A stretch of 64,000 nucleotides of DNA from Octopus sinensis (Eukaryota). The notes beneath the pieces were generated by a model. The model did not search any database, had not been told where the DNA came from, and saw only the letters and a program-made list of their open reading frames with translations. How positions within the stretch are numbered: position 1 is the stretch's first letter; each line of letters begins with the position of its first letter. The DNA lies in the NCBI RefSeq assembly GCF_006345805.1, contig NC_042997.1, positions 134,292,001-134,356,000 on the forward strand, read 5' to 3'. Made by a program: the position numbers and the translations under genes. Of the stretch, positions 16,108 to 48,000 are shown one piece after another.

Positions 16108-16116
<9 letters not shown>

Positions 16117-19034
16117 CATGGGCCCTGGCCCGAAAGTCGTCCCGAACAGGCGGGTCAGGTACTCCTCGTCGACGTCCAGGTTCGCCCCGAGCTCGTCGTC
16201 GTACCTCCCCTCCACTAAACCCCTATAGAATGCTTTGGTTGTGTTGAAGTCACTTAAGGTCGACCCAGGACGGCAGAGTTGCTTGAGAGCAACGCGACAC
16301 TCGCGGTGCCATTCGCCCTTCCTCGGCCTCTTTTTGATCCACGACTGCAGTTCGGTCATGGAGACGAGCTGCGGGAAAGCGTGCCTCACAAACGGCGACC
16401 ACACCTGTTCACCGTCGTCTACATAGAGCCAGAGATGTCGCAGTCTCAGCGCGTGTCTGCGCATCATCAACCACGGCATGCCCAGCCCTCCTTTTAACGG
16501 GTGTTGACAGCAAATGGATCGCCTGACCATCGGGACGCATCCTTTCCACAAGAAGCGAAAGAGGATGCGTTGTAGTTTGGTAATGGTAGGGTCGGGACAA
16601 GGTACGACGGTCAGGCGGTAGTAGATGACGGACGCGATGTACGTGTTCGCCACCTCCGCTCGACCTTTTAGGGACAGTTTCCTCTCGGCCCATTGCCGGG
16701 CGAGAGTGACCACCCTACTCGTTATCTCGTTCCAGTTCTTCTCCACTTGGAGGTCCGGACCGAACCAGACCCCGAGCAACTCAACCGGGCCGTCGGTCCA
16801 GCGTCCCACGACGGAGGCGCTGGTGGACGGCATGGGCTTGCTTCTCCAGGTGCCTAGTCGCAAGCCCACTGACTTTTCCCGGTTGATTTTCGCTCCTGTC
16901 ACCGCTTCGTAGTTTTTCAGTGTCTCGCCGACCAGCTCGATGTGCTCGTGGCTAGACACTATGACGGTGACGTCGTCCGCGTATGCAGACACGCTCGTCC
17001 CGCATCCCAATTCTCGCGGGATGCCCCTTAGAGTCGCCAGCTTCCGCAGTAGTGGCTCAAGAGTCAATACGTATAGAAGCGCCGAGAGGGGGCATCCCTG
17101 ACGGACCGAACGTGCAATGTCGAAAGGTCTCGATAGATGTCCATTTACGCGAATTACCGAACGGATGCCTCTGTACAAGGCAGCTATCCAGCCGCGGAAG
17201 ACGGGACCGAAACCAGCCGCTCTCAGGACTGCCTCCAAGTATCGATGGTCTACCCTATCAAAGGCTTTCGATTGATCCAAGTTGATCAGGGCCCCACCCA
17301 TGCCAGGTTCGTTAACTACCCTGTCTATGATGTAGCGCATCAGATGGAGGTTGTCATGGATGGTCCGGCCTGGCACGGCGCATGTTTGCGCCTTGTCGAC
17401 CAGTTTCTCGATGACAAGCGCCAACCTCTTGGCTAGCACTTGGCCAAAATTTTCAAGTCTGCATTAAGCAGAGTGATGGGCCTAAAGTTATCTATTACAT
17501 TTCCCTTGTTTAGATCTTTCTTCAGCAGTGTTACGGCTCCTCGGCTCACAAAACCAGGAATGCTCCCGTTTTGCTGCCAGTTGCAGTACACCGCCGCCAA
17601 GAGATCTCCAAACAAGTCTGACATTCAATTGTAAAGCTCGTAGGGTAGACCATCCAAACCCGGTGATTTGTCCCTCGAGCATTCTGCCATCGCTTCCCGC
17701 ACTTCCGCCGCCGTGATGGCACCTTCGCAGCACCCTGCCTTTCTTGTCGAGAGTCGTGGTAGGCTATGTAGGTAGGCACTGAAGTCCACCCTACGTTCTT
17801 GCCCTCCACTCGTTCCGAACAGTCGGGCAAAATGCTGCTGAAAGGCCTCACACATTTTACTTGGCTCGAGCAATTCGCGCCCCTGTTCATCTACCAGTGA
17901 CCGAATGGTGGCTTTGTTGCCCTGTTGCGCCTCTGCCACCCGGGCCTCTCTCGCGGCTCCAACACCTTCGTTCCTTAGAGCACGCATCCTAGCTCTGACA
18001 GCACATCCTTCGTGTTTGGCGTTGAAGTGTTGGTCGAGGGCCAACCTCGCCGCCAAAACGTCGGATGCGATGCCGCTTCTAATTGCCTCTTCTAGCTTCT
18101 TAACTAGCTCACCCTCTACTCTATTTCTATCTATGGCTAGTGCTTTGCTGTACCTAATCGCTTCTGCTTTTACTGCTCTCTTGAGGGCAAACCACCATTT
18201 GTTGTTGATGATGGCTCCCGTCAAAGCCCTCTTTACTAGTGTGCTAATCCGGTCTCTGAAAACTTGTCTCGATGGGAAAGACGCGTTTAGTTTCCAGTAT
18301 CCGGGACCCTGCCTAAGTGTCTTACCTAAGTCTAGCGTACATGTCACAAGTTTGTGATCCGTGTAGCTGACTATGTGGAATTGTGGACATCCTATGCTAT
18401 CTCTATCTACTGTCCTACACAGTATCCTATCTAGATACGATCTCGACGACCCGATGCGGTTGCTCCATGTCCACGTTGGCGCATTCGGGTGGTCTAGTCG
18501 GAACCTGTCAGACAGTTGAAAGCGTCTGAGCAGGTCTCTGAGGCATTTGCATCCCCGTCTATTCCTATCTCTACCCACGTAGTCTACATGCGTGTCCAAG
18601 GTAGCATTCCAATCCCCCACTAAGAGTAAAGGACGAGACGTTCCCAAGAAAATTTCTAGACGTTGAAAGAAATCCGCCCGACCTGTTAAGGGCGGTGCGT
18701 AAACTGATACGAGTCGAAAAGCGCACCCATTGCTGCCGTCGACATCCAGGACGACCAGTCTACCCTCCGGGTCTACGAATATTGTCCTTACATTGAGATC
18801 CAGACTCTTGTGAAAAAGTACCGCGGTGCCACTACCGCCCATTCTCGGCAGACAGGGGGAAAAATAAATGTTGAACTGTCCGCCAAACATGGTCTTTAGG
18901 GCCCGCGGATTGTGGAGTCTGGTCTCGCTTATGGCTATGATTTCTAACTTATGTGACTTTATGTCATTTAAGAGGTACCCTTGTTTCCAAGGGGACCCCA
19001 AGCCACGCGCATTTACACAACCAATCTTGATCAT
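16108..19034 (-). pseudogene. LINE ORF2 (APE endonuclease + RT), disrupted
   Basis: APE motifs NARGL, ISETR, GDWNA, SYLDRI, TDH; RT motifs DQSKAFDRVDH, RQGCPLS, YADD. There is an in-frame TGA at 17625-17627 and a 1-nt deletion near 17440 (AAG TG CTA for AAG GTG CTA). Confidence 0.92.
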
Positions 19035-19065
19035 AGTTCTAATGAATTAGAATACAGAGGGTTAC

Positions 19066-21069
19066 TTACTGCTCGAAAGTTTTTGCTTTCTCCTCCGTTG
19101 GTTTGTCCTCGAGAAGATCCCAGTACAGTTTCTTTGTGAGATATTTTTGGCATTTACCAACCGCACTGGGGAAAATGCCTTTGAGTGTGTGGTGCAGACT
19201 TTTGGAGATGTGTAATATTTTGATGTGGTCTGGTGGTGTTGTGTATGGGTGATTGTTTGTTTTTATGTCATCTTCTGTTATGTTTGTTTTTGATTGGATG
19301 TATTCCATCAAATTTGTGTTTTTGGTGTCTATGGCTGTGAGCATGTTTGCTGTATATGTTTTTGTGGTGTTGGTGTGGCTGTTGTTTGCGTTGGGTTTTG
19401 AAATGTCTTCGGGAGATGTATTTCCCCCTGCTTTGTTCGTGTTTGCATTTGGTTTGGTTGTGTTTCTGCTCTTTATTTTCCTTCTTTTTGTAGCTATTTG
19501 CCATTCCTCACTGCTTTCGTCTTCCGACGAAATTTCTGAGGAATCAGAAGGGGGTAGGGGTATGTTGTGGGCTTCTATGTATGTCTGTGTAAGTGGTTGT
19601 GTTGTTGTTTTCGTTGTTGTTGGTTGTTGAGTGTTTGTGTGTGTTGAGTGCGGTATAAGGGATGGGGGATCAGTTTGTGTGTGTTTTCTTTGTTTTTCTG
19701 TTCCTTTGGGTTTTGCTGTTGATGGTGGTGTTGGTATTTTTTCAGGTGTCGAGTGGTTTTTGGTTGATGACGGATTAGCTTGGTGTGCTTCTCTTGTCTT
19801 CTGTGTTGATGGTGGTGTGGGTAGTAGAGCTTTTTTTCCGGAGTGCTTTGGTTGTGGTAGTGGTTGTTGTTGTTGCTCTTGGTGTGCAGTGGTTGGGCAC
19901 GTCTTTTTCAAGTGTGTTTCGCTTCCACACAAATAGCAGCGTGGTCGCCTGCCCTCTACCACTATATAGAGTTTGTAGCCTCCTGGCAGTTCTATAGCGG
20001 TGGGTATCTTCTCTCTTGCTGCTTCATCCAATTGAAGCAGGAATTCGATTGATTTGCCCACATAGTCTTTCTCTCCTAGAACCGCGATTTCCAGGATGTT
20101 TGTCTCTGACATTGTCTCTGACATTTCAAAGCAGATGGCAGAGACCAACCATTGTGTTTCGACATCAAATGGTATGTTTTTTATTTGGACTTTCGTGACC
20201 CTTTTGTTTAAGTAGACTGGTATCATTACCAAGTCGTCCGAATGCAGCTCCAACGTGGAAAAACGTTTTGCTAAACTTTCGTTGAGGAAACGTACTTGGA
20301 CTGTACCAAATTTGTTTCCCCAACTGATATATTCCTTGGAGTCCCATACAGGACGAAGGCATTTATCGATTTTTTCCTGCGGTGCATTTTCTGTTCTTCT
20401 TGTTGTTTTGTTTATTACTTTATAAATTATTGTTTTTTTGTGTGTGTTTTCCACGATGTGTTGTGGAATATGAAGGTGCAATTTGTCTCCTTCTTTGGAG
20501 AAGAGTGCCTTTGTGCGGTTTATCTCTTGTGTGGTGAATGTTACAATTGTTCTTTTTTGTTTTGTTACGTCCGCAAAATTCGTTTTGAATTTGGCAGTAG
20601 AAGTGTTAATTGTGGCAGTGTTAATTGAAGTCATGGTAGTGGTGTTGGTGTTGGCGGTATTAGCAGCAGAAGGCTTGGATGTAGCATTTGACGTCGTAGT
20701 AGTGGTGTTGGTGTTGGCGGTGTTGTCTTTGGTAGGCGGCTTTGTGCCAATTTCGTTGTTGTTGTTGTTGGTGGTGATGGTGGTGGTGCTGGCATTCATG
20801 TTTTCGTTTGTATTCATTTTTGAAATCCCTTTCTCTGTCCCTTTATCATCAACAAGTGGTGTGGGGAGTGAGGGGAAATCTAAGTTAATGTCTTTGGTCG
20901 CGGCGATGGTGAATGCGACGTTAGATTTGTTGTTGTTGTTGGTGGTGGTGATGGTGGTGACAGCGGTGTTCACGCTGCGATGTTTAGCAGCTAGTGGTAG
21001 CAATAGTGTTTTGCTACCGTTCTGCATGACTGGCGGGCTAGCCACGTGGTTTCTAGTTGCCATTTTCAA
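19066..21069 (-). CDS. LINE ORF1 gag-like protein (667 aa)
   Basis: Open frame with a T/N-rich N-terminus, an RRM-like centre and the CCHC knuckle CYLCGSETHLKKTC. It stops 31 nt before the ORF2 ATG. Confidence 0.85.
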   Translation of the reverse strand: MKMATRNHVASPPVMQNGSKTLLLPLAAKHRSVNTAVTTITTTNNNNKSNVAFTIAATKDINLDFPSLPTPLVDDKGTEKGISKMNTNENMNASTTTITTNNNNNEIGTKPPTKDNTANTNTTTTTSNATSKPSAANTANTNTTTMTSINTATINTSTAKFKTNFADVTKQKRTIVTFTTQEINRTKALFSKEGDKLHLHIPQHIVENTHKKTIIYKVINKTTRRTENAPQEKIDKCLRPVWDSKEYISWGNKFGTVQVRFLNESLAKRFSTLELHSDDLVMIPVYLNKRVTKVQIKNIPFDVETQWLVSAICFEMSETMSETNILEIAVLGEKDYVGKSIEFLLQLDEAAREKIPTAIELPGGYKLYIVVEGRRPRCYLCGSETHLKKTCPTTAHQEQQQQPLPQPKHSGKKALLPTPPSTQKTREAHQANPSSTKNHSTPEKIPTPPSTAKPKGTEKQRKHTQTDPPSLIPHSTHTNTQQPTTTKTTTQPLTQTYIEAHNIPLPPSDSSEISSEDESSEEWQIATKRRKIKSRNTTKPNANTNKAGGNTSPEDISKPNANNSHTNTTKTYTANMLTAIDTKNTNLMEYIQSKTNITEDDIKTNNHPYTTPPDHIKILHISKSLHHTLKGIFPSAVGKCQKYLTKKLYWDLLEDKPTEEKAKTFEQ

Positions 21070-21294
21070 AATGAAAAATGGCTAAAAAACCCACGAAAGT
21101 TTTGAAAGTTTTTTTGTAATTTCGCCCATACAGGGGCGGAATTCTACGTGAATAATTCTCAGGTTTTTTAGTGAATGAACTTGCACAACGATTAAAACAA
21201 AATATTTGACAACAAGGAGTTTTAAACATGTAAAAGTGGCCAACTTACGTGGAGCCGATATGACTAGCGTCCGTCCATTGTGATAGATAGATAG

Positions 21295-37853: not shown

Positions 37854-38055
37854 GTATGCATGCATGTATGTTTGTGCGCGCGTTTGTACGAGTGCATGTG
37901 CCTGTGTGTGAGTATGTGAGTATGTGTGTGCGGGTCTGATTATTTTCTTGTGTGTGTGTGTGTGTGTTATTCCTAAATTTCTTAACCCCTCTGAATTTCA
38001 GCACCATACCAAATGAAATAATATGAATTGACGAAAATATTTTTGTTTCTCACAG

Positions 38056-38538
38056 GCTTCCGTTCACGTTGTATTGTTCCACTTCTTCTGCTTCGTATCG
38101 TTCGTGCCATCGGCATCAATTCCTGTCCAATGCAAAATACCAACCAATTTGAAAATCCTGTATGAGAATATTGCCGATATGCCACAAATAGGAAGTGACC
38201 AGCTCGCAGTAACCGATGAGGATAAAGCTTGCCCAAAATCTTTATTCTTTACTGATATCCGTAAGCGTTCTACCTGCCCTTGGTATCTTAAATTGGTCCA
38301 CGATTCATTAGTTTATCCTCCGTTACGTATGGAAGCTGTATGTCGCTGTCTAGACTGTCTAGACTCTGACAGCAACCATCTATGTGTAACTGTATACACA
38401 AAAACGACTGTCCTCAAACGTACAGGTGAATGCGTTGATGGAGAATATGTGTATAAACCAAGTGTGATTGAGATAGCTACAGCCTGCGTCTGTGCACGAA
38501 AGATCGATGTGCAGCAGAGAGATAATGCAAATCATTAG
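38056..38538 (+). CDS. IL17: IL-17-like cytokine A, main coding exon
   Basis: Acceptor TTTTGTTTCTCACAG| (phase 0). IL-17 signature: RSTCPW..D..YPP..EAVCRC..C..C..VLKR..C..Y..ACVCAR. Confidence 0.92.
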   Translation, partial: ASVHVVLFHFFCFVSFVPSASIPVQCKIPTNLKILYENIADMPQIGSDQLAVTDEDKACPKSLFFTDIRKRSTCPWYLKLVHDSLVYPPLRMEAVCRCLDCLDSDSNHLCVTVYTKTTVLKRTGECVDGEYVYKPSVIEIATACVCARKIDVQQRDNANH

Positions 38539-38571
38539 TCGTAAAAATCAGCTAAATACGAAATTATTCAA

Positions 38572-38631
38572 TGCGTGTAACGCAAATGTTATTCATATGA
38601 AATTAAAGTTGACCACCGTGTGGTTATTATA
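38572..38631 (+). promoter_or_regulatory. Conserved twin stem-loop in the IL-17A 3' UTR (second is CDE-like)
   Basis: TGCGT-GTA-ACGCA (38572-38584), then GTTATTCATATGA, then TGACCAC-CGT-GTGGTTA. It is shared with gene B. Confidence 0.65.
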
Positions 38632-38670
38632 GTTTACCTGCGCGCGCAAAGACAAATACATACACATATT

Positions 38671-38744
<74 letters not shown>

Positions 38745-39110
38745 AAGCCAATTGTTTTTTTTGTATGTGTGTGTATTTCAAACTTTATATAGACGTACAA
38801 TTTTATAATTTTTTGTCTTATTTAAATGCATATTTAAATAAATACACACACACACACACACGCACACGCACACGCACACACACACACACACGCACACGCA
38901 CACACACACACACACACACCACACACACACACACTCACACACACTCACATTTATACCTCAGGCTTATTTCAGTTTCTGTCAATCAAATTCATTCACAGTT
39001 TTAATCAGCCTGAGGTTATAACAGAAGGCACATGCCCAAAGTGTCTCAAACCATATAGGTCCGAAGCAATCTTCTTAACAACATATGTATGTACATATAT
39101 ATATATATAT

Positions 39111-39882
39111 CAGAGACATTCTATTTGCTGACGATGCTGCTAATGGACCGCTTCTCCCAGGCCTGCAATGACTTTGGGTTGAGCATCAGCCCGAAGAAGA
39201 CAACCGTCCTGGTGCAAGGCACATCAGTAGAACCAGCCGTCACCATCGATGACTACGAACTTGAAGTTCATCAGTTTACATACCTTGGGTCCACCATCAC
39301 GCCCGTCAGGAAAAAAAGCTGAATAGCTTTCATCTCGGAAGCCTACGACGCATACTCAGCATCACCGAAGTCCTGACTCGTTCTGGTCTCCCTTCCATGC
39401 ACACCTTGCTGAGGCAACGTCCATTACGTTGGCTAGGCCACGTTCGCCGTATGGAGGACGGCCAAATCCCAAAAGACATTCTCTACGGAGAACTCGCTGC
39501 AGGGCAGAGAAACAAGGGCCGCTCGCAGCTGAGGTACAAGAACGTGTGCATGAGTGACATGGAGGCGCTCAACGTCGACATCAACTCCTGTGAGGTCCTG
39601 ACAGCGGACTGCACCTGGTGGAAAAGCACACTTCTCACACAACTATGGATCGGTAAAGAGAAGCTGTCAGTTGCAGCTGCAGAAAAGCGAGCATGACATA
39701 AGGGATCGACAGCCGACAGACCAGAATCCACACACAGATGCGATCTATGCGACCGAGACTGTTATTCTCGCATTGGTCTCCATAACCACAGGAGGCGCTA
39801 CTCAAGCCGAGCAGCCCAACCTAGTCAATAAATGGACGGACGTGGTACCCATAGTCAGCTATGACCGAACGTGGCCCAAAGC
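39111..39882 (+). mobile_element. RTE-BovB-clade LINE 3' fragment with an internal deletion
   Basis: LFADDAA, FGLSISPKKT, FTYLGSTI, LRWLGHVRRMEDG.IPKDILYGEL, C..C.RDC.SRIGL.NH.R. Confidence 0.85.
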
Positions 39883-39898
39883 TATATACGTGTTTGTG

Positions 39899-39930
<32 letters not shown>

Positions 39931-40350
39931 CTGAGGGAATGTATATATTTTTTACTCTCTCCTCCTCTCTCTTGATCCCTCTCTGCGCGCGCATGTATGT
40001 ATGTATGTATACATGCATATCTCAGTAAACAAATGTATTTTTATAAAATGCAACAACATATACTTTTATATACATTGCTTATTCATAAAATATTCTATGC
40101 ATCAAAGGTTAATGGGGTTTTTTATGGTGTATATTCTTTATTCTTTTATTCCTTTACTTGTTTCAGTAATTTTGATTGTGGCCATTCTGGAGCACCGCCT
40201 TTAGTCTAGCAAATCGACCCCGGGACTTATTCTTTGTAAGCGTCGTACTTATTTTATCGGTCTGTTTTGCCGAATCGCTAAGTTACGAGGACGTAAATGC
40301 ACCAGCATCGGTTGTCAACCGATGCTGGGGAGACAACCACAGACACACGA

Positions 40351-40405
<55 letters not shown>

Positions 40406-41539
40406 TACAACGGGGTACCAAAACCACTCACAAGGCTTTAGTCGGCCCGAAGTTATAGTAGAAGACTCTTGCCCAAGGTGCCACGATGTGAGACTGAACC
40501 CGGAACCATGTGATTGGTAAGCAAGCTACTTACCACACAGCCACTCCAGGCAGAATAGTTAGCACGACAGGCAAAATTCTAACAGCATTTTGTCCGTCAT
40601 TACGTTCCGAGTTCAAATTTAGCCGAAGTCGACTTCGACTTTCATCCTTCGGGGTCCATAAAGTATATCTGTCGATGTAATAAAGTATATCTGTCGATGT
40701 AATCAAATTCCTCTCTCTTTCGAACTGGCTGGGCTTGTGCCAAAATTTGAAACCAATAATAACTGCATATATTTATAAATACATCTACAACAAATTTGCA
40801 TGCAAACATTTATATAAATCATATAGGCATAAAATATACAATACAATAAAGTTAATGAATTTTTTTTCAATATACATATATATTTAATTTATATATAATA
40901 CCTGCATATATTTATAAATACATATATATATATAAATTTGCATGCAACTATTTATATAAATCATATAGGTATAAAATTTATAATACAATAAAGTTAATGG
41001 ATTTTTTAAATATACATATATATCTAATTTATATAATAATAATGAATGTATATATTTGAATGTATTTTTATAATAATTTCTCCCCGACACTCATTTGTAA
41101 GAATTTTGTAAATATATTTTTTCATTACATATATCTTTCATATATGTTATTATGCAAGTAACACGCGACAAATTACTATATACCAGTTTGATTTGTAGCA
41201 AATGTATGTTACTTTCAAAACAAATAAAATGACTGGTCTTCCTTCGAAAAAAGAAACAAAAAAACAAAATAAAATCTATTACAATTACAAATGCTTTTCC
41301 TAGTTATTTTTTGTTTTATGTTTCCGTATTTATTGAAAGCGTAACTGAATGAAATACTGGGAAACAGCATGTAACGTTCAAAACATTTTCCAGTATTGTG
41401 TTGCGCTCTTTGAAATATCATTTTCTTACTGTTAATGAGTTTAGCTGTTAATAGGTAGGATTGTTTCTGAGAATATTGCCAGTATTATGTGCCGATATAA
41501 GTCATCTAACTAATGATGTGTGAATGAATATATATATAT

Positions 41540-41940
41540 ATATATATAACTCCACTACCGATGATGCCCCCTACCTGAGCATTAACGTCACCAAGACTAA
41601 CAACAGCGGAAGTAGCAGCGTCAGCATAAACAAGGGGAGTATCGCCGGCAGCAACATTCGAAGATACAGCAAATGTTCCAGAAACAACTTCAAGCAGCGC
41701 CTCTCCAACCACACATCCTGGTTTAGTATCCTTGAGATATGATATGCTACATCCTTGGCCAGCCACTTGTGGTAAATGAACGATGAAAGGACTCCACACG
41801 TAATCTCATTGAAGATCTTATAAAAACCGGGCCATTACATCAACGGACGCAAGCGTTACAAACCGTATAAAGCTGAACGGGCGAGGATATTAAAGAACTC
41901 GTTTGACCAGGTTAACACCTTAAATTCCAGGACACTTCGG
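41540..41940 (+). mobile_element. Decayed PLE GIY-YIG fragment
   Basis: FKQRLSNHTS.F..YATSLASHLW..ISLKI..Y.NG.KR..ERARI..LNSR, with stop codons. Confidence 0.55.
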
Positions 41941-43399
41941 TCGATTCCTGTTGAAATCCTAGGATGCGCAAGCTGATTGGATGGATTTCGGATAGCGATT
42001 TAAGGGAGACAGCCCCCTGCACTTGTCCCTTCTCTTTTGTTTGTATGTTCAACACCTAATCATGAGGTTTTTTATGCCTCCACTTTGAAGAGAGGTAATA
42101 GGACACAGGTCACGAGACGTTTTAAATCCAAGCGTTTTGTGAACGCGAAGCCCTGGGTAACCTCATAGACCGACCATAACTACCTTTATCGAAATACTCC
42201 GCTACTCTATAACTTGAGCAGTTGTGTAGAGGAGTGGCAAAGGCGACAATTGTGAAGCTGGGGCGCGCACGCGTGCATGTGACAGTGTGCTTGTGTGTGT
42301 GTGTACAAACAATCACACTAACATATACTTGTATAGGAACATATATAATAGGAATATGTATATATACACGTATAACTGGGAGATATGTGGAATATGTATA
42401 TATATGCATAAATATTTGGAACATATACGGGCATAGACGAGTTGGTGGTTATATCCATTGAGCAATGCTTCAACATTTCGATGGGAAAACAAAAGTATAA
42501 ACATATACTAAACACAGTACATGAAAATAGCCATTTGGTAAATGTGATACATCTTCTCGGAGCAGAGACGATCTTAAATCGAGGATTTTATCATGTATAT
42601 TTAATATATTTGCATTTATTTTTCAAGCACATGCCAATGACCAATCTGAGTTATTTGTCTTGACTTATTTCGTTTAAATTACCTAAGCCATTAATGTGCT
42701 TTTCTCTCTTTTTTTATATGTCAAAATCCCTTAGCTGCTAAAGATAATTTAGGACAATTGTCTTGGTGATGACGCTTGTTGAGTAAGAAGCACGGGTCCT
42801 CATATTTTTAAACAATAATCCTGTCGTTTTCGTAAATGATATGTCACCTTCGGATAAGGCGGCGAGCTGGCAGAAACGTTAGCACGCCGGGCGAAATGCT
42901 TAGCCGTATTTCGTCTGCCGTTACGTTCTGAGTTCAAATTCCGCCGAGGTCGACTTTGCTTTCATCCTTTTGAGGTCGATTAAATAAGTACCAGTTACGC
43001 ACTGGGGTCGATATAATCGACTTAATCCGTTTGTCTGTCCTTGTTTGTTCTTTCCGTGTTTAGACACTTGTGGGTAGTAAAGAAATAGGAATGCCACCTT
43101 CGGAGAATACTTGATTCTTGAGTTTGTGTCCCCTCATATAGAGCTAGAATTTCAATTGATATTTGGTTATAGTGACATATCCCGTAGATATGGAGATGAT
43201 TTTAATAAATCAAGAATTTATGTTCTATGCTATTTGTCTATATTGTTCAAACACATGCTCACGCTACTAGACACCCTGATTTGTTTATTTCTGCTCATTT
43301 TTGTTTAAAACATTATAATGATCTGGTTCTAATCAACTGATATATCTCGTTTAAACTGCAAAAATGATCAAAGCATACAGTCCAAATTAAGTAATGGGG

Positions 43400-43995
43400 G
43401 TAAAATCAAAACACATGCATGCTAATATGCATCACAATCCCCTCTGGACCAATTTTGGCTCGAAATGAAATGGGAAAACCGTCAAAATACAAGGATCTTG
43501 AATTCAAGTTACTTAAAGTGCGGGGAATAAAAGTGAAAGTGAAAGTGAAAATGAAAGTGTTAAATGTGATACATGAACAAAATGATAGAAGCCATACTAC
43601 GACTCAAATACAGTAATAAAATACATTGAGATAAACTTTCATTGAGTTTGATTTCAAGAGATTTTTGAGGTGCTTCAGATACGCAGCGATGATCTCATCT
43701 TTCATTTCTCTGCGCAAGTTGTTGTCCAGCTCCAAGATCCCGAGACACGTGCTCCCACCAGCACCCATGATCTCTATTTACTCTCCGTTTGGCAGTCCTA
43801 TGCTCCTGCAATCTGCTCATTTCTCACGATTTGAAGTGAGAAGCGTACAGTTTGAGATACCGAATTCCATCCCAATATAATTGCTGCACAACTGTACAGT
43901 CTCAACCAGTCTCGCCGTTTCAGTTAGATTTTGTGAACAGTTTTAAGTCGCCGAAAAAGAGAATTTGGTTGAGACGAGGTCCATTCTTCTTCAGA
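43400..43995. mobile_element. Old R4/Dong-like fragments (endonuclease piece on +, RT piece on -)
   Basis: ITIPS..EMGKPSKYKDLE on +; LNQILFFGDLKLF..IGMEFGISNC..LGILELD..EMKDEI on -. Confidence 0.55.
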
Positions 43996-44682
43996 TCATA
44001 GTGTGCGTTGACTTTATGTAGAATTACGCAAAGAAGGAATCTAGGCTATAACAAATTGCAAAGGTAAACAAGAATTTCACTGTAAGAAAACGTTTTTAAT
44101 TGTTACCTCGGTTGTGAGCTGGTTGCTAAACTAAGCATGCTGTTTTTGATTAGTGTAAGCACATTTCGCAGCTACTCCACTCGTGTCAAGTGTTTTCAGA
44201 ACAAATTATAACAAAATCTTTATTATAAACAAAATCTTTATTATAAATAAAAAGATATAAAATAAATAAAAAGATATAAAATAAAAAGAAAAATAATATA
44301 AAAAATATATAAGAAATTATAAAAGTATATATGTTTAGAAAAAATTACCAGATCTTTATCTTAAATAAAGAGATAAAAATAAAAATAAATATATCACAAT
44401 TTAATATGAATAAAGCTTAAAAGTGAAAAAAGGTTTTACAGTTGTTTGTAAGGTATACAATAAAAATACATAAAGATAAAAAGTAATAATAGATCTTAGA
44501 TAGATGTATTTTGTACTTTGGAGGCGTGGTGTTATATATAAAGCCGTTGGCTAGAATTTGATGTTTGTTCTCTGATCAATGTTTTTTTTTTATCTCTGTC
44601 TCAATTACATTTGAGTACTTCTTTTTTGCACTCTTCTAAAGCCTTTTGCCTCCATAAAAAGAGGCAAACATTATTTTTTGTC

Positions 44683-44726
<44 letters not shown>

Positions 44727-45131
44727 GACGGTCTTCTTTCAGTTTCCGTCTAACAAATCCTCACAAGGCTTTGGTCGGCCCGAGGCTATAGTAGAAGAAA
44801 TTTATCCAAGGTGCTACGCAGCAAGACTGAACCCGGAACCATGTGGTTGGGGAGCAAGATTCTTACCACACAGCCAACCTGTGCCCATATATATTTAATT
44901 TGTAAAAATATGAAGATATACAATGTTCGCAGTTTTAAGTATAATGTATAGGTTTCAATTATGTTCAAATATCACTTGTTGTATGGAATATACTTGAGGT
45001 ATTAATGTTGTTAATAGTTTAAAAAGATATAAATGCATTCACTTGTTAAGTTATAAAACGTATTAGTCATAAAATATATAAATGTTTTCCAAACCAAATA
45101 TAAAAACGAAATATATTGATATTATGCAAAT

Positions 45132-45197
45132 TATAATAACCACACGGTGGTCAACATAACGTTCCAAATCATGTGAATAACTTTTGTGCTACGCACA
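45132..45197 (-). promoter_or_regulatory. Conserved twin stem-loop in the IL-17B 3' UTR
   Basis: The minus strand reads TGTGC-GTA-GCACA, GTTATTCACATGA, then GTTGACCACCGTGTGGTTATTATA (24/24 identical to gene A). Confidence 0.65.
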
Positions 45198-45223
45198 GGT
45201 TACAAATTGTGAGTTCATTGTTA

Positions 45224-45748
45224 TTACGACTCATACTCGTGATTATTTTTACTGAGAATTACATCTATCTTCCGTGCACACACGCAGGCTGATGCTGTAT
45301 CAATCACGTGTGGTTTATATACATACAGTCCATCAATGCATTCATCTGTACGTTTGAGGAAAGTGGATTTAGTATATACAGTCGTACATTGGTAATTTTT
45401 GTTAGAGTTCAGACAGTCTTTACAGCGACAGACTACGTCTGTACGTGATGGCGGGAAAAGTGTTGAATCATAGGTAGTGCGCAGGTACCAAGGGCAAGTT
45501 GAACGGTTACGGATGTCCTCAGAAGGTTCATAATATTTTGGGCAGCTTTTATCACCATCAGTCCGTGTTGCCCAATTACTTTCGGTTGGAGCCTTCTCAG
45601 CCGATAGAAAAAAATTATTGCCATTGGCTGCGCTGGACAGATTCTCATAGCGAACTTCTAATTTTTTTGGTATTTTACACAGGGTCGGAATTGCCGCCGA
45701 ATATACAATCCAGATGCAGTTGAAGGAGGTTAAAACCTTGGAGAGAAC
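45224..45748 (-). CDS. IL17: IL-17-like cytokine B, main coding exon
   Basis: Acceptor TTCTCTCTTACAG| (phase 0), then VLSKVLTSFNCIWIVYSAAIP..RSTCPW..VCRCKDC..C..FLKR.DEC..ACVCARKID. It is a clear paralogue of gene A. Confidence 0.92.
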   Translation of the reverse strand, partial: VLSKVLTSFNCIWIVYSAAIPTLCKIPKKLEVRYENLSSAANGNNFFLSAEKAPTESNWATRTDGDKSCPKYYEPSEDIRNRSTCPWYLRTTYDSTLFPPSRTDVVCRCKDCLNSNKNYQCTTVYTKSTFLKRTDECIDGLYVYKPHVIDTASACVCARKIDVILSKNNHEYES

Positions 45749-46364
45749 CTGTAAGAGAGAACATATTCTCGTCAAGTGTTGCATGTACTTTACTTTTCAT
45801 ATAATTTATCAGAATGAACAATTGTAAGAAGAATTATTGCTTTGACAGTGACATGAATGTATGAGAATTAATGTTAATAATTTATGATTACAGCGTTTCA
45901 ATGGGGGTTAAAGAACAAAACCAAATAATGTTAAAAACAAAAGGTACTTCAGCAGTTTATGATTTATATTTATTATTGCTTTAAGCGACAAAGCAACTGC
46001 AGCAGTCGACAGTGAAAGAAAGTGAGAAGTAGAAAAGAGATGAAAAATTCGGTAAGAAATTAGAGAAAATAGATAACAGCTTGACTTCCGAACCAGCAAT
46101 TGTAGTTAGTCAAAATGTATGTGTGCCAGAAGCATGAGAACGTTGCTTATACATGTATACATACATATATACATACATACTTGTATACCCAGATACACAC
46201 CATGTATAAATGTTATATAAATATATATAATTTAAAAATAGGATAAAATCTTTATAAGAATTTATCAAGTCGTTAGCGTGAAAAACCTCATAAGGGAAAA
46301 ACTCCACCAATTTTTTCACTAAAACGATAAAAATTACTAAAGTTGATTTCTCAGCCACACTTAC

Positions 46365-46794: not shown

Positions 46795-48000
46795 GCGACA
46801 CTATGACTGGGTACTGAAGCAATTAATGAACTGCTCAAAAGTGGATGTAGTATACCTCGACTTTGCGAAGGCATTTGACAAGGTTGACCATGCAATGATA
46901 TGCCACAACATACGGAGACTCGCCATCACAGATAAAGTCGGAGAGTGGCTGCATGATTTCCTAAAGGACAGGAGCCAAACTGTAGAAGCCAACGGAGCTC
47001 TCTCCACTGAGACACCAATAGTGAGTGGAGTGCCCCGGGCGCTGTGCTGGGACCACTGCTTTTCATGGTAGCCCTATCGGATATGCCATCAGTGACAAAA
47101 ACAGTCATGTTTACAAGCTATACTGACTACACAAAAGTCGCGCAGTCAGTCAAGGAAACCTCTGATATTACGCTCTTACATAAAGATCTAGATGCCATTT
47201 ATACATGGGCTGAGGATAACAACATGCAAATTAAAGCAAGTAAATTCCAGGCCCTCCGCTACCAGTTAAGCACTGCTCAGGAATCACGACATCAGTACGT
47301 TGGACCAAGTGGAGCAACGATTCCAGAAGCAAAAACGGTGCGTGATCTTGGAATAGAAATGAGGAACAATGCCTCATTTCACACACATATCATCAAAATG
47401 GTAGCAGTATCCAGAAGACTGGCTCGTTGGATCCTGAGAACCTTCCGGACAAGGGACCAAGAAACTATGATGACACTATGGAAGTCATTTATCCTCAGCA
47501 GCCTGGGCTTCTGCTCTCAGCTATGGTCACCTTATACTACAAGGACAATAGCAGAGCTTGAAACAGTCCAACGACATTACACAAAGAAAGTTGCATCAAT
47601 GGAACGATTGAGTTACTGGAACGATTGAGAGCTGTGACTCTATTCCCTGGAACGAAGACGGGAGAGGTATGCAGTGATATATATATGAAAGTTACTGGAA
47701 GCACTGGTACCAAACTTTGGAATAAAGAGCTATACCAGACCACGAACAGGACATCACTGTGCTGTTCCCATTGTACCGACTGCTTCATCTCGAGCAAGGA
47801 CGATGTACTGCAATAGCTTGGGTTTCAAGGGCCCACAGCTGTTTAACTGTCGGCCGAAGCATCTGAGGAGCCTCCATGGAGTGGATGTAGACGTTTTTAA
47901 ACGTGAACTTGACCTCTGGCTCGCCGAGATCCCGGATGAGCCAATATCTGAGCAAGAAACTCAAAAGAGGGGAGTAGCATCGAACTCCATCCTTCACTAG
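46795..48000 (+). mobile_element. Older CR1-clade LINE RT fragment
   Basis: YLDFAKAFDKVDH, SGVP, GPLLF, WAEDNNMQ, RDLGI, LWSP, ERRRER, NSLGFKGPQLFN, with stops and frameshifts. Confidence 0.88.

What the first reader, a model, noticed from the sequence alone, without database searches (positions are those of the whole stretch)
38572..38631. CDE-like tri-loop stem shared exactly by both IL-17 3' UTRs
Seen: GTTGACCACCGTGTGGTTATTATA is identical in gene A (38608-38631, +) and gene B (45132-45155, -) although the proteins and surrounding UTRs are well diverged. It folds as TGACCAC-CGU-GTGGTTA, a 7-bp stem with a pyrimidine-purine-pyrimidine loop. Established: Roquin and Regnase-1 degrade vertebrate inflammatory mRNAs (TNF, IL6, NFKBIZ) through stem-loops with Py-Pu-Py tri-loops. 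Inference: octopus IL-17 mRNAs carry an equivalent decay element, possibly across the whole gene cluster.
Basis: partly seen in the sequence, partly recalled or inferred. Interest (0 to 1): 0.75.

Follow-up and report, generated by a model that had tools for sequence, protein, structure and literature searches.

The report
Conserved tri-loop hairpin in octopus IL-17 UTRs
Just after the stop codon of most interleukin-17 genes of this octopus lies a small RNA hairpin, kept intact by selection for a very long time, that has the shape vertebrate Roquin/Regnase proteins use to destroy inflammatory mRNAs; this suggests, without proving it, that this kind of cytokine control is much older than vertebrates.

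Summary
The 24-mer is exact at 38608-38631(+) and 45132-45155(-), about 70 nt past the stop codons of two IL-17-domain exons. It folds as UGACCAC-CGU-GUGGUUA.

It is not peculiar to this pair. The window is Octopus sinensis chromosome 1. Of 53 IL-17 exons in the genome, 33 carry an intact copy of this hairpin (SL2), 5 a decayed one and 15 none. SL2 belongs to a roughly 100-nt module that starts with a second, covarying hairpin (SL1, UGYGU-GUA-ACRCA).

The SL2 stem core changes 0.8 times per site across 35 paralogues. Third codon positions change about 4 times per site and the loop about 5. That pattern indicates purifying selection, not gene conversion.

Loops are CGU, UGU, UAU or CAU in 29 of 33 copies, which is the published Roquin CDE consensus (6-8 bp stem, YRU loop). 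The module is also present in O. bimaculoides, Argonauta and, with a compensatory closing pair, in a decapodiform.

The genome encodes a ROQ domain about 90% identical to human Roquin-1, and Regnase-type RNases.

Presence in mature mRNA, protein binding and decay were not tested. I rate a real conserved RNA hairpin at about 0.85 and a Roquin/Regnase-type decay element at about 0.5.

The parts
38032..38538 (+). Gene A: last (main) coding exon of an IL-17-like gene, stop TAG 38536-38538
   Evidence: Open frame; PF06083 IL17 at 51.1 bits. Same place as G000:C1:134330269-134330499 in the genome-wide IL17 scan.
38572..38584 (+). SL1 of gene A: UGCGU-GUA-ACGCA, a 5-bp hairpin with a GUA tri-loop
   Evidence: Sequence. 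Four of five pairs show changes on both sides across 38 UTRs, e.g. U-A 17 / C-G 16 at one pair.
38592..38601 (+). Middle segment UUCAUAUGAA. In most paralogues it is a possible 5-bp hairpin, UUCAU-(6 nt)-AUGRA. Weakly supported.
   Evidence: 90% of cells paired, but almost no informative variation. It is shortened in gene A.
38610..38626 (+). SL2 of gene A: UGACCAC-CGU-GUGGUUA, a 7-bp stem with a YRU tri-loop. This is the reported element.
   Evidence: It is the only helix in the RNAalifold consensus. The stem core is the slowest-evolving stretch of exon plus UTR.
38608..38631 (+). The 24-nt stretch identical to gene B
45224..45796 (-). Gene B: last (main) coding exon of an IL-17-like gene, stop TAA 45224-45226
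   Evidence: Open frame; PF06083 at 42 bits; genome scan.
45185..45197 (-). SL1 of gene B: UGUGC-GUA-GCACA. It differs from gene A by two compensatory double changes (C-G to U-A and U-A to C-G).
45137..45153 (-). SL2 of gene B: UGACCAC-CGU-GUGGUUA
45132..45155 (-). The 24-nt stretch identical to gene A

Best explanation
SL2 is a selectively maintained RNA hairpin in the proximal 3' UTR of cephalopod IL-17-like mRNAs. Its core starts 57-98 nt after the stop codon. It closes a roughly 100-nt UTR module that the gene family has carried since before octopods and decapodiforms split.

The most likely mechanism is that of a vertebrate constitutive decay element. The 6-7-bp stem capped by a YRU tri-loop with a C-G closing pair would be recognised by shape by the ROQ domain of the single octopus Roquin. 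Roquin would then recruit deadenylation/decay factors, possibly together with a Regnase-type endonuclease. This would keep the many IL-17 paralogues short-lived and tightly inducible. SL1 may serve as a partner element, by analogy with the adjacent Roquin-binding and Regnase-cleavage hairpins of C. elegans ets-4.

Shown here: the sequence, the fold, the family-wide and cross-species conservation, the selection pattern, the fit to the CDE consensus, and the presence of the trans factors.

Inferred only: inclusion in the mature mRNA, binding by Roquin/Regnase, and the direction of the effect (decay).
For: 1. Distribution. TGACCACCGTGTGGTTA with up to 2 mismatches has 10 copies within 215 kb of the IL-17 cluster, while genome-wide counts are below the reversed-pattern control. 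The composite pattern SL1...SL2 has 25 genome hits, all beside IL-17 exons, against 0 for the control. Of 52 PF06083 exons plus one divergent copy, 33 have an intact SL2, 5 a decayed one and 15 none.

2. Selection. Parsimony changes per site over 35 paralogues were: codon positions 1/2/3 = 2.05/1.77/4.11; UTR flanks 3.6-4.8; SL2 core arms ACCAC and GUGGU 0.8 each; SL2 loop 5.0; sequence after SL2 above 7. A tree built from the CDS only gives the same picture (0.8 against 3.78, Poisson P = 5e-9; against codon position 2, P = 0.017).

3. Structure. 89% of cells are paired, against 35-47% when the partners are slid. The changes seen in SL2 keep pairing: A-U / G.U / G-C / C-G at the base pair, and U.G in L041, L083 and L037. 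The closing pair is C-G in octopods and U-A in two decapodiform paralogues. RNAalifold predicts SL2. The median folding probability is 0.57, and 76% of copies exceed 5%.

4. Fit to the CDE consensus. The published consensus is a 6-8-bp stem, a YRN loop with U preferred at position 3 (YRU), no stem sequence requirement, and a Y-R closing pair favoured when the middle base is G; AAU is a weak variant (PMC6294493; PMC11609897). Octopus loops are UGU 17, CGU 6, UAU 4 and CAU 2, i.e. 29 of 33 are YRU. The others are CAA 2, UGA 1 and AGU 1. AAU appears only in an unnamed octopod's intact copy (L083) and in two decayed O. sinensis copies (L066, L080). Stems are 6-7 bp and the closing pair is C-G.

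5. Trans factors. A ROQ domain scores 96 bits. It is about 90% identical to human Roquin-1 over 125 aa, and R219, K220, K239, Y250, K259 and R260 are retained (residues named in PMC6294493 and PMC9371910). Zc3h12a-type RNase exons are also present.

6. Invertebrate precedent. RLE-1/Roquin and REGE-1/Regnase act through two adjacent hairpins in the C. elegans ets-4 3' UTR (PMC9371910).

7. Position in the transcript. 32 of 36 module-bearing genes have no AAUAAA or AUUAAA between the stop codon and SL2.
Against: - No transcript could be retrieved, so inclusion in the mature mRNA is unproven. The Logan contigs found look genomic or cannot be classified.
- The five core pairs of SL2 hardly vary. 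Covariation support for SL2 itself is therefore thin and rests on the base pair, on wobble changes and on the weakly aligned decapodiform copies (CM score only 20.5 bits, E about 0.1). In the small cross-species alignment the shuffle control is not exceeded.
- Such strong conservation of the stem sequence is more than the shape-only recognition described for Roquin would require. It hints at an additional or different reader.
- Some copies have loops outside YRU (CAA, UGA, AGU; UAA and CAA in the decapodiform).
- SL1's GUA loop is not a known ROQ ligand.
- Fifteen IL-17 genes lack the element.
- In several paralogues, downstream (CA)n is predicted to compete with SL2 folding.
Confidence: 0.5

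Rival explanations
1. SL2 (with SL1) is a genuine conserved RNA structure in the IL-17 3' UTR, but it is read by another factor and does something else: translation control, localisation, stabilisation, or a cephalopod-specific RNA-binding protein that recognises the ACCAC/GUGGU stem sequence.
For: - The stem sequence is more conserved than second codon positions. The literature says stem sequence hardly matters for Roquin.
- SL1 has a non-CDE loop (GUA) yet covaries clearly.
- Decapodiform loops are YAA.
Against: - No known RNA-binding protein motif fits better.
- The loop spectrum in octopods coincides exactly with the four YRU loops enriched for ROQ binding.
- Stem length and closing pair also fit.
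- No Rfam family matches.
Confidence: 0.3
2. The element acts at the DNA level: a palindromic protein-binding site, for example a RUNX-type site (TGTGGTT is contained in loop position 3 plus the 3' arm), or a cruciform downstream of the genes.
For: ACCAC-NNN-GTGGT is an inverted repeat with a variable centre, and TGTGGTT matches the RUNX core (my own knowledge, not tested). Near-invariant arms are typical of sequence-specific sites.
Against: - The changes that do occur keep RNA pairing on the sense strand but break the palindrome or RUNX core. Examples are GAUCAC/GUGGUU (U.G), CACCAU/GUGGUG, and the decapodiform ACCAU/AUGGU.
- The 5' arm is as conserved as the 3' arm, although it mostly does not form a RUNX site.
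- A second, unrelated hairpin (SL1) sits 30 nt upstream with compensatory changes.
- The element keeps a fixed place and orientation just after the stop codon.
Confidence: 0.07
3. SL2 marks or assists 3'-end formation of the transcripts, i.e. it is a processing signal at the end of the conserved UTR, rather than controlling stability.
For: Homology between paralogues ends within about 10 nt after SL2. Many copies have no canonical poly(A) hexamer within 300 nt downstream.
Against: - It does not resemble the only known metazoan 3'-end hairpin, the histone stem-loop (6 bp, 4-nt loop; my own knowledge).
- Some copies have AAUAAA 50-290 nt downstream.
- Nothing here tests it.
Confidence: 0.05
4. 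There is no function. The identity reflects recent duplication or gene conversion between paralogues.
For: The family expands by tandem duplication, and some copies are near-identical. Partial duplicates exist.
Against: - Stems are invariant while the three loop bases and both flanks change at or above the third-codon-position rate.
- The element is present in both clusters (27 Mb and 134 Mb).
- It is also present in O. bimaculoides, Argonauta hians and a decapodiform.
Confidence: 0.03

Closest known systems
Roquin constitutive decay element (CDE), prototype TNF CDE (UGU tri-loop, C-G closing pair)
   Same: A hairpin in the proximal 3' UTR of a pro-inflammatory cytokine gene. The stem is 6-7 bp, the tri-loop is YRU (UGU in 17 copies) and the closing pair is C-G. 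This lies within the relaxed consensus of 6-8 bp plus YRN with U3 preferred (PMC6294493, PMC11609897).
   Different: - The upper stem is C-A-C/G-U-G, not three Y-R pairs with a 3' purine stack. The later literature says these features are dispensable.
- The stem sequence is itself strongly conserved.
- A G.U pair lies in the lower stem of some copies.
- The host is a cephalopod and the gene family is IL-17.
- No binding or decay data exist.
Tandem CDEs (UCP3, TM2D3) and multi-hairpin Roquin response elements (Nfkbid, Ox40)
   Same: Several hairpins are clustered in one short UTR segment. In one subfamily (L034) SL2 is followed after 2 nt by a second 7-bp YRU hairpin, GUUAUAC-UAU-GUAUAAC.
   Different: In most paralogues the partner hairpin (SL1) has a GUA loop, which is not a known ROQ ligand. 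The middle hairpin's hexaloop does not fit the ADE consensus GUUYUA.
C. elegans ets-4 3' UTR: ADE (bound by RLE-1/Roquin) next to RCE (cleaved by REGE-1/Regnase)
   Same: This is an invertebrate example of Roquin/Regnase control through two adjacent 3' UTR hairpins (PMC9371910). It offers a model for an SL1 + SL2 pair.
   Different: The nematode Roquin site is a hexaloop ADE, not a tri-loop CDE. The target is a transcription factor, not a cytokine. The roles of SL1 and SL2 are not assigned.
Regnase-1 target stem-loops (IL6 and others; Py-Pu-Py loops)
   Same: The same loop class and the same kind of gene. Zc3h12a-type RNase exons are present in the genome.
   Different: Regnase recognition rules are poorly defined and nothing here tests cleavage.

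Membership tests
Roquin CDE (constitutive decay element) | Hairpin capped by a trinucleotide loop | tested here: met
   MFE and centroid folds; RNAalifold consensus; 33 intact copies in the genome.
Roquin CDE (constitutive decay element) | Stem of 6-8 bp (5 bp weak, 9 bp inactive) | tested here: met
   7 bp in genes A and B, 6 bp in the large subfamily, 5 bp in one copy (L043). Criterion from PMC6294493.
Roquin CDE (constitutive decay element) | Loop YRN, with U at position 3 in conserved or high-affinity CDEs (YRU) | tested here: met
   29 of 33 copies are YRU (all four variants occur) and 32 of 33 are YRN. AGU occurs once. AAU, the published weak variant, is the loop of an unnamed octopod's intact copy (L083) and of two decayed O. 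sinensis copies (L066, L080). Decapodiform copies have YAA, which is YRN but not YRU.
Roquin CDE (constitutive decay element) | Evolutionary conservation of the structure and appreciable folding probability (>5%) | tested here: met
   Median folding probability 0.57, and 76% of copies exceed 0.05.
Roquin CDE (constitutive decay element) | Located in the 3' UTR of the mature mRNA | tested here: inconclusive
   The SL2 core starts 57-98 nt after the stop codon. No poly(A) hexamer lies before it in 32 of 36 genes. No transcript sequence was obtainable.
Roquin CDE (constitutive decay element) | Bound by the ROQ domain | not testable with these tools
   Only the prerequisite was checked: a ROQ domain is present and about 90% identical to human, with the known RNA-contact residues kept.
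Roquin CDE (constitutive decay element) | Shortens mRNA half-life in a Roquin-dependent way | not testable with these tools
   Requires reporter or half-life experiments.
Roquin ADE (alternative decay element) | Hexaloop fitting GUUYUA (purines at positions 1 and 6) | tested here: not met
   The middle hairpin loops are AAUGUU, AGUAUC, AGUUUU and similar, compared with the consensus.
Regnase-1/REGE-1 cleavage stem-loop | Py-Pu-Py-looped hairpin cleaved by a Zc3h12a-type PIN RNase | not testable with these tools
   The loop class fits and RNase exons are present. Cleavage was not tested.
Any curated Rfam family | Match to a covariance model at or near the gathering score | tested here: not met
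   Only sub-threshold microsatellite-driven miRNA hits were found in 38400-45400, and none lay on the module.
RUNX-type palindromic DNA site | Conserved TGYGGTY core irrespective of RNA pairing | tested here: not met
   Variants GUGGUG (L037) and AUGGU/AUGGC (decapodiform) break the core but keep pairing through a change on the other arm.

The most novel reading that the evidence does not exclude
The SL1-SL2 module is an ancestral coleoid 'regulon tag'. It would place an entire expanded cytokine family (more than 30 IL-17 paralogues) under one Roquin/Regnase decay circuit, with SL2 as the Roquin site and SL1 as a partner or cleavage hairpin. This would show that structured-RNA control of inflammatory cytokine mRNAs by Roquin/Regnase predates vertebrates and operates in lophotrochozoan innate immunity.
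Probability: 0.3. Interest if true: 0.8.

Novelty: new member of a known kind. Interest (0 to 1): 0.62.

Why it matters
Roquin and Regnase control of cytokine mRNAs through tri-loop hairpins is regarded as a vertebrate immune mechanism. The one worked-out invertebrate case (C. elegans ets-4) concerns a transcription factor and a hexaloop.

A CDE-conforming hairpin under stronger constraint than the protein-coding positions, in most members of the expanded cephalopod IL-17 family, would extend this logic to lophotrochozoan cytokines. It would also explain how dozens of tandemly duplicated pro-inflammatory genes are kept in check.

The idea is directly testable. The octopus ROQ domain is about 90% identical to the human one, so existing ROQ proteins, EMSA/ITC protocols and HEK293 reporter systems can be used as they are. 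My literature searches found no report of such an element in mollusc IL-17 genes.

Tried and rejected
- Transcript evidence. An exact-protein look-up of gene B found nothing on record. Cluster members of ten octopus IL-17 proteins are all genome-derived. Logan contigs SRR118693xx contain intron or intergenic sequence and so are genomic. I replaced it with a composite pattern.\n- Rfam gave nothing relevant.\n- I rejected the idea that SL2 derives from a transposable element. The other genomic copies of TGACCACTATGTGGTTA belong to an interspersed repeat whose flanks are unrelated to the IL-17 UTR.\n- I rejected the middle hairpin as a Roquin ADE.\n- I rejected a poly(A)-signal explanation for the conservation. 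ATTAAA just upstream of SL2 occurs only in gene A and L058; two other copies (L080, L083) have an ATTAAA further upstream.\n- Non-cephalopod IL-17 loci (L096, L101) show no module. The test has little power at that distance.

Full report
**1. What is in the window**

The 24-mer GTTGACCACCGTGTGGTTATTATA occurs exactly twice, at 38608-38631 (+) and 45132-45155 (-). No match appeared in 100 shuffles.

Each copy lies about 70 nt downstream of the stop codon of a long open frame that carries a Pfam IL17 domain. Gene A is 38032-38538 (+) at 51 bits, and gene B is 45224-45796 (-) at 42 bits.

The genes are well diverged. Nucleotide identity is 228/322 in the coding part and 46/71 between stop codon and motif, and there is no alignable sequence beyond the motif. 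For this pair alone, an exact run of 24 has P of about 0.02 under a uniform model.

The element folds as UGACCAC-CGU-GUGGUUA (38610-38626; 45137-45153 on the minus strand). Its free energy is -7.0 kcal/mol (z = -2.75). It appears in the MFE of both UTR contexts and has an ensemble probability of about 0.95.

**2. Where the window comes from**

The window is G000:C1:134292001-134356000 of a 2.72-Gb genome. The contig length (213,406,131 bp) is the one on which NCBI's Octopus sinensis IL-17-like proteins lie.

A six-frame scan finds 52 IL17-domain exons. Most lie in two clusters on this chromosome, at 27.3-27.6 Mb and 134.1-134.9 Mb. This agrees with the published IL-17 expansion in octopus (PMC8353272).

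**3. The hairpin is a family-wide feature**

TGACCACCGTGTGGTTA with up to 2 mismatches has 10 copies within 215 kb around the window. Genome-wide counts are below the reversed-pattern control.

I extracted the sequence after the stop codon of every IL-17 exon. This shows a shared module of about 100 nt, laid out as follows:
- the stop codon;
- about 25-50 nt of spacer;
- SL1 (UGYGU-GUA-ACRCA);
- a U-rich linker;
- a possible UUCAU-(6 nt)-AUGRA hairpin;
- UUUAAGU;
- SL2, of the form (U)RACCAC-YRU-GUGGUU(A).

Of 53 exons (52 plus one divergent copy, L009), 33 have an intact SL2, 5 a recognisable but broken one and 15 none.

A composite pattern (SL1, a 25-55 nt gap, then the SL2 core) has 25 matches in the whole genome. 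All lie next to IL-17 exons, and the control pattern has none. The module is therefore specific to this gene family and is not a dispersed repeat.

An unrelated interspersed repeat happens to contain TGACCACTATGTGGTTA, but its flanks are different.

**4. Selection, not gene conversion**

I aligned 240 nt of CDS plus 200 nt of 3' flank from 35 paralogues and counted parsimony changes per site.

| Region | Changes per site |
|---|---|
| Codon position 1 | 2.05 |
| Codon position 2 | 1.77 |
| Codon position 3 | 4.11 |
| UTR flanks | 3.6-4.8 |
| SL2 arm ACCAC | 0.8 |
| SL2 arm GUGGU | 0.8 |
| SL2 loop | 5.0 |
| Sequence after SL2 | above 7 |

A tree built from the CDS only gives the same result: 0.8 against 3.78 (P = 5e-9), and against second codon positions P = 0.017.

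Gene conversion or recent duplication would homogenise the loop and flanks as well. Here the ten stem-core bases are the slowest-evolving positions of the exon and UTR, while the three bases between them evolve freely.

**5. Structure**

On the 38-sequence alignment A3, 89% of cells are paired, against 35-47% when the 3' partners are slid.

SL1 covaries strongly. Four of its five pairs have changes on both sides, for example U-A 17 / C-G 16. Gene B differs from gene A by two compensatory double changes, and Argonauta has a third, G-C to A-U.

SL2's five core pairs hardly vary, so covariation cannot prove that helix. The changes that do occur nevertheless keep pairing on the sense strand:
- A-U 19 / G.U 14 / G-C 3 / C-G 1 at the sixth pair;
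- U.G in L041, in L083 and at the closing pair of L037, whose base pair has also switched to C-G;
- a closing pair of U-A instead of C-G in two decapodiform paralogues.

RNAalifold predicts SL2 as the only consensus helix. The median folding probability in context is 0.57. Copies followed by (CA)n microsatellites score low.

**6. Other species**

- The covariance model R1 finds the module directly after the stop codon in O. bimaculoides (82 bits). There the orthologue of an O. sinensis CGU-loop copy has a UGU loop on the same stem.
- It finds the module in an unnamed octopod (79 bits; GAUCAC-AAU-GUGGUC).
- In Argonauta hians it scores 48 bits (UAACCAC-UAU-GUGGUUA).
- A second Argonauta paralogue scores 37 bits and has a decayed SL2.
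- Contigs from a decapodiform align at the same place, but weakly (20.5 bits). The taxon is inferred from a protein 73% identical to Sepiella japonica IL-17-3. The hairpins are GUUGACCAU-UAA-AUGGCC and ACCAU-CAA-AUGGU.
- Two non-cephalopod IL-17 loci show nothing.

The module therefore predates the radiation of octopods and probably that of coleoids.

**7. Comparison with the known system**

The current CDE definition is as follows (PMC6294493; PMC11609897):
- a 6-8-bp stem (5 bp is weak, 9 bp inactive);
- a tri-loop YRN, with U strongly preferred at position 3 (YRU);
- essentially no stem sequence requirement;
- a Y-R closing pair favoured when the middle base is G;
- AAU as a weak extra loop;
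- tetra- and penta-loops rejected.

In O. sinensis the loops are UGU (17), CGU (6), UAU (4) and CAU (2). These are exactly the four YRU loops. The remainder are CAA (2), UGA (1) and AGU (1). AAU is the loop of the unnamed octopod's copy (L083) and of two decayed O. sinensis copies. Stems are 6-7 bp and the closing pair is C-G, as in the TNF CDE used for all the ROQ-RNA structures.

One subfamily carries a second 7-bp YRU hairpin 2 nt after SL2: GUUAUAC-UAU-GUAUAAC, with UGU in another species. This resembles tandem CDEs.

SL1's GUA loop and the middle hexaloop do not fit the CDE or ADE rules. No Rfam family matches.

**8. Trans factors**

The genome has one ROQ-domain locus (96 bits). Its two exons are about 90% identical to human Roquin-1 over 125 aa. 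They retain R219, K220, K239, Y250, K259 and R260 (residue roles from PMC6294493 and PMC9371910).

Zc3h12a-type RNase exons are present as well.

In C. elegans, RLE-1/Roquin and REGE-1/Regnase cooperate on two adjacent hairpins of the ets-4 3' UTR (PMC9371910). Roquin recognition of decay hairpins therefore does operate in an invertebrate.

**9. What remains open**

I could not obtain any transcript. Inclusion in the mature mRNA rests on three indirect points:
- the element's position just after the stop codon;
- the absence of AAUAAA or AUUAAA between stop codon and SL2 in 32 of 36 genes;
- the sense-strand G.U pattern.

Binding and decay are untested. The very strong conservation of the stem sequence exceeds what shape-only recognition needs, which leaves room for a different or additional reader.

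**10. Verdict**

I put the probability that SL2 is a selectively maintained RNA hairpin of IL-17 3' UTRs at about 0.85. I put the probability that it works as a Roquin/Regnase-type decay element at about 0.5. If the second holds, it is a new member of a known kind, in a new phylum and a new gene family.

Noticed in passing
window 38572-38584 (+) and 45185-45197 (-): SL1 is a second tri-loop hairpin (UGYGU-GUA-ACRCA) about 25 nt upstream of SL2. It has clear compensatory changes across paralogues and in Argonauta. Its GUA loop fits no known Roquin ligand, and its role is unknown.
   Followed up: partly
L034 (C1:134564010-), L048, L069; other octopod L086:885-905: One subfamily has an extra perfect 7-bp hairpin, GUUAUAC-UAU-GUAUAAC (UGU in the other species), 2 nt after SL2. 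It persists where SL2 itself has decayed. This suggests turnover between equivalent YRU hairpins.
   Followed up: partly
G000:C1:134868217-134868404 (L057): The whole UTR module is duplicated in tandem behind one IL-17 gene. The second copy begins with the last codons of a gene fragment.
   Followed up: no
G000:C1:134171430-134173304 (L005/L006/L082): A 1.5-kb tandem duplication holds one intact and one frame-broken IL-17 exon, both with the module. It could be a real young duplicate or an assembly artefact.
   Followed up: no
L098-L100 (C4:18.83 Mb, C8:57.95 Mb, C9:19.88 Mb): An interspersed repeat family, often in inverted pairs, contains the 17-mer TGACCACTATGTGGTTA. Its flanks are unrelated to the IL-17 UTR, so the resemblance is coincidental.
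   Followed up: yes
L095:602-720 versus L102:852-970: Two decapodiform IL-17 genes from different data sets have almost identical 3' UTRs over about 120 nt, although their coding sequences differ considerably.
   Followed up: no
window 38672-38745 and 38845-38950: (TCTA)n and (CA)n microsatellites start within 50-220 nt after SL2 of gene A. In other paralogues a (CA)n tract just downstream is predicted to compete with SL2 folding, giving a probability below 5%.
   Followed up: partly
window 16108-21081 (-): A non-LTR retrotransposon lies here. It has an Exo_endo_phos endonuclease (17625-19046), RVT_1 (16108-17463) and an upstream 671-aa ORF without a Pfam hit. Further RT fragments lie near 47011-47628.
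   Followed up: partly
window 38032-38120: Gene A's open frame has no in-frame ATG before the signal-peptide-like segment, whereas gene B has one. A short upstream first exon is expected but was not located.
   Followed up: no
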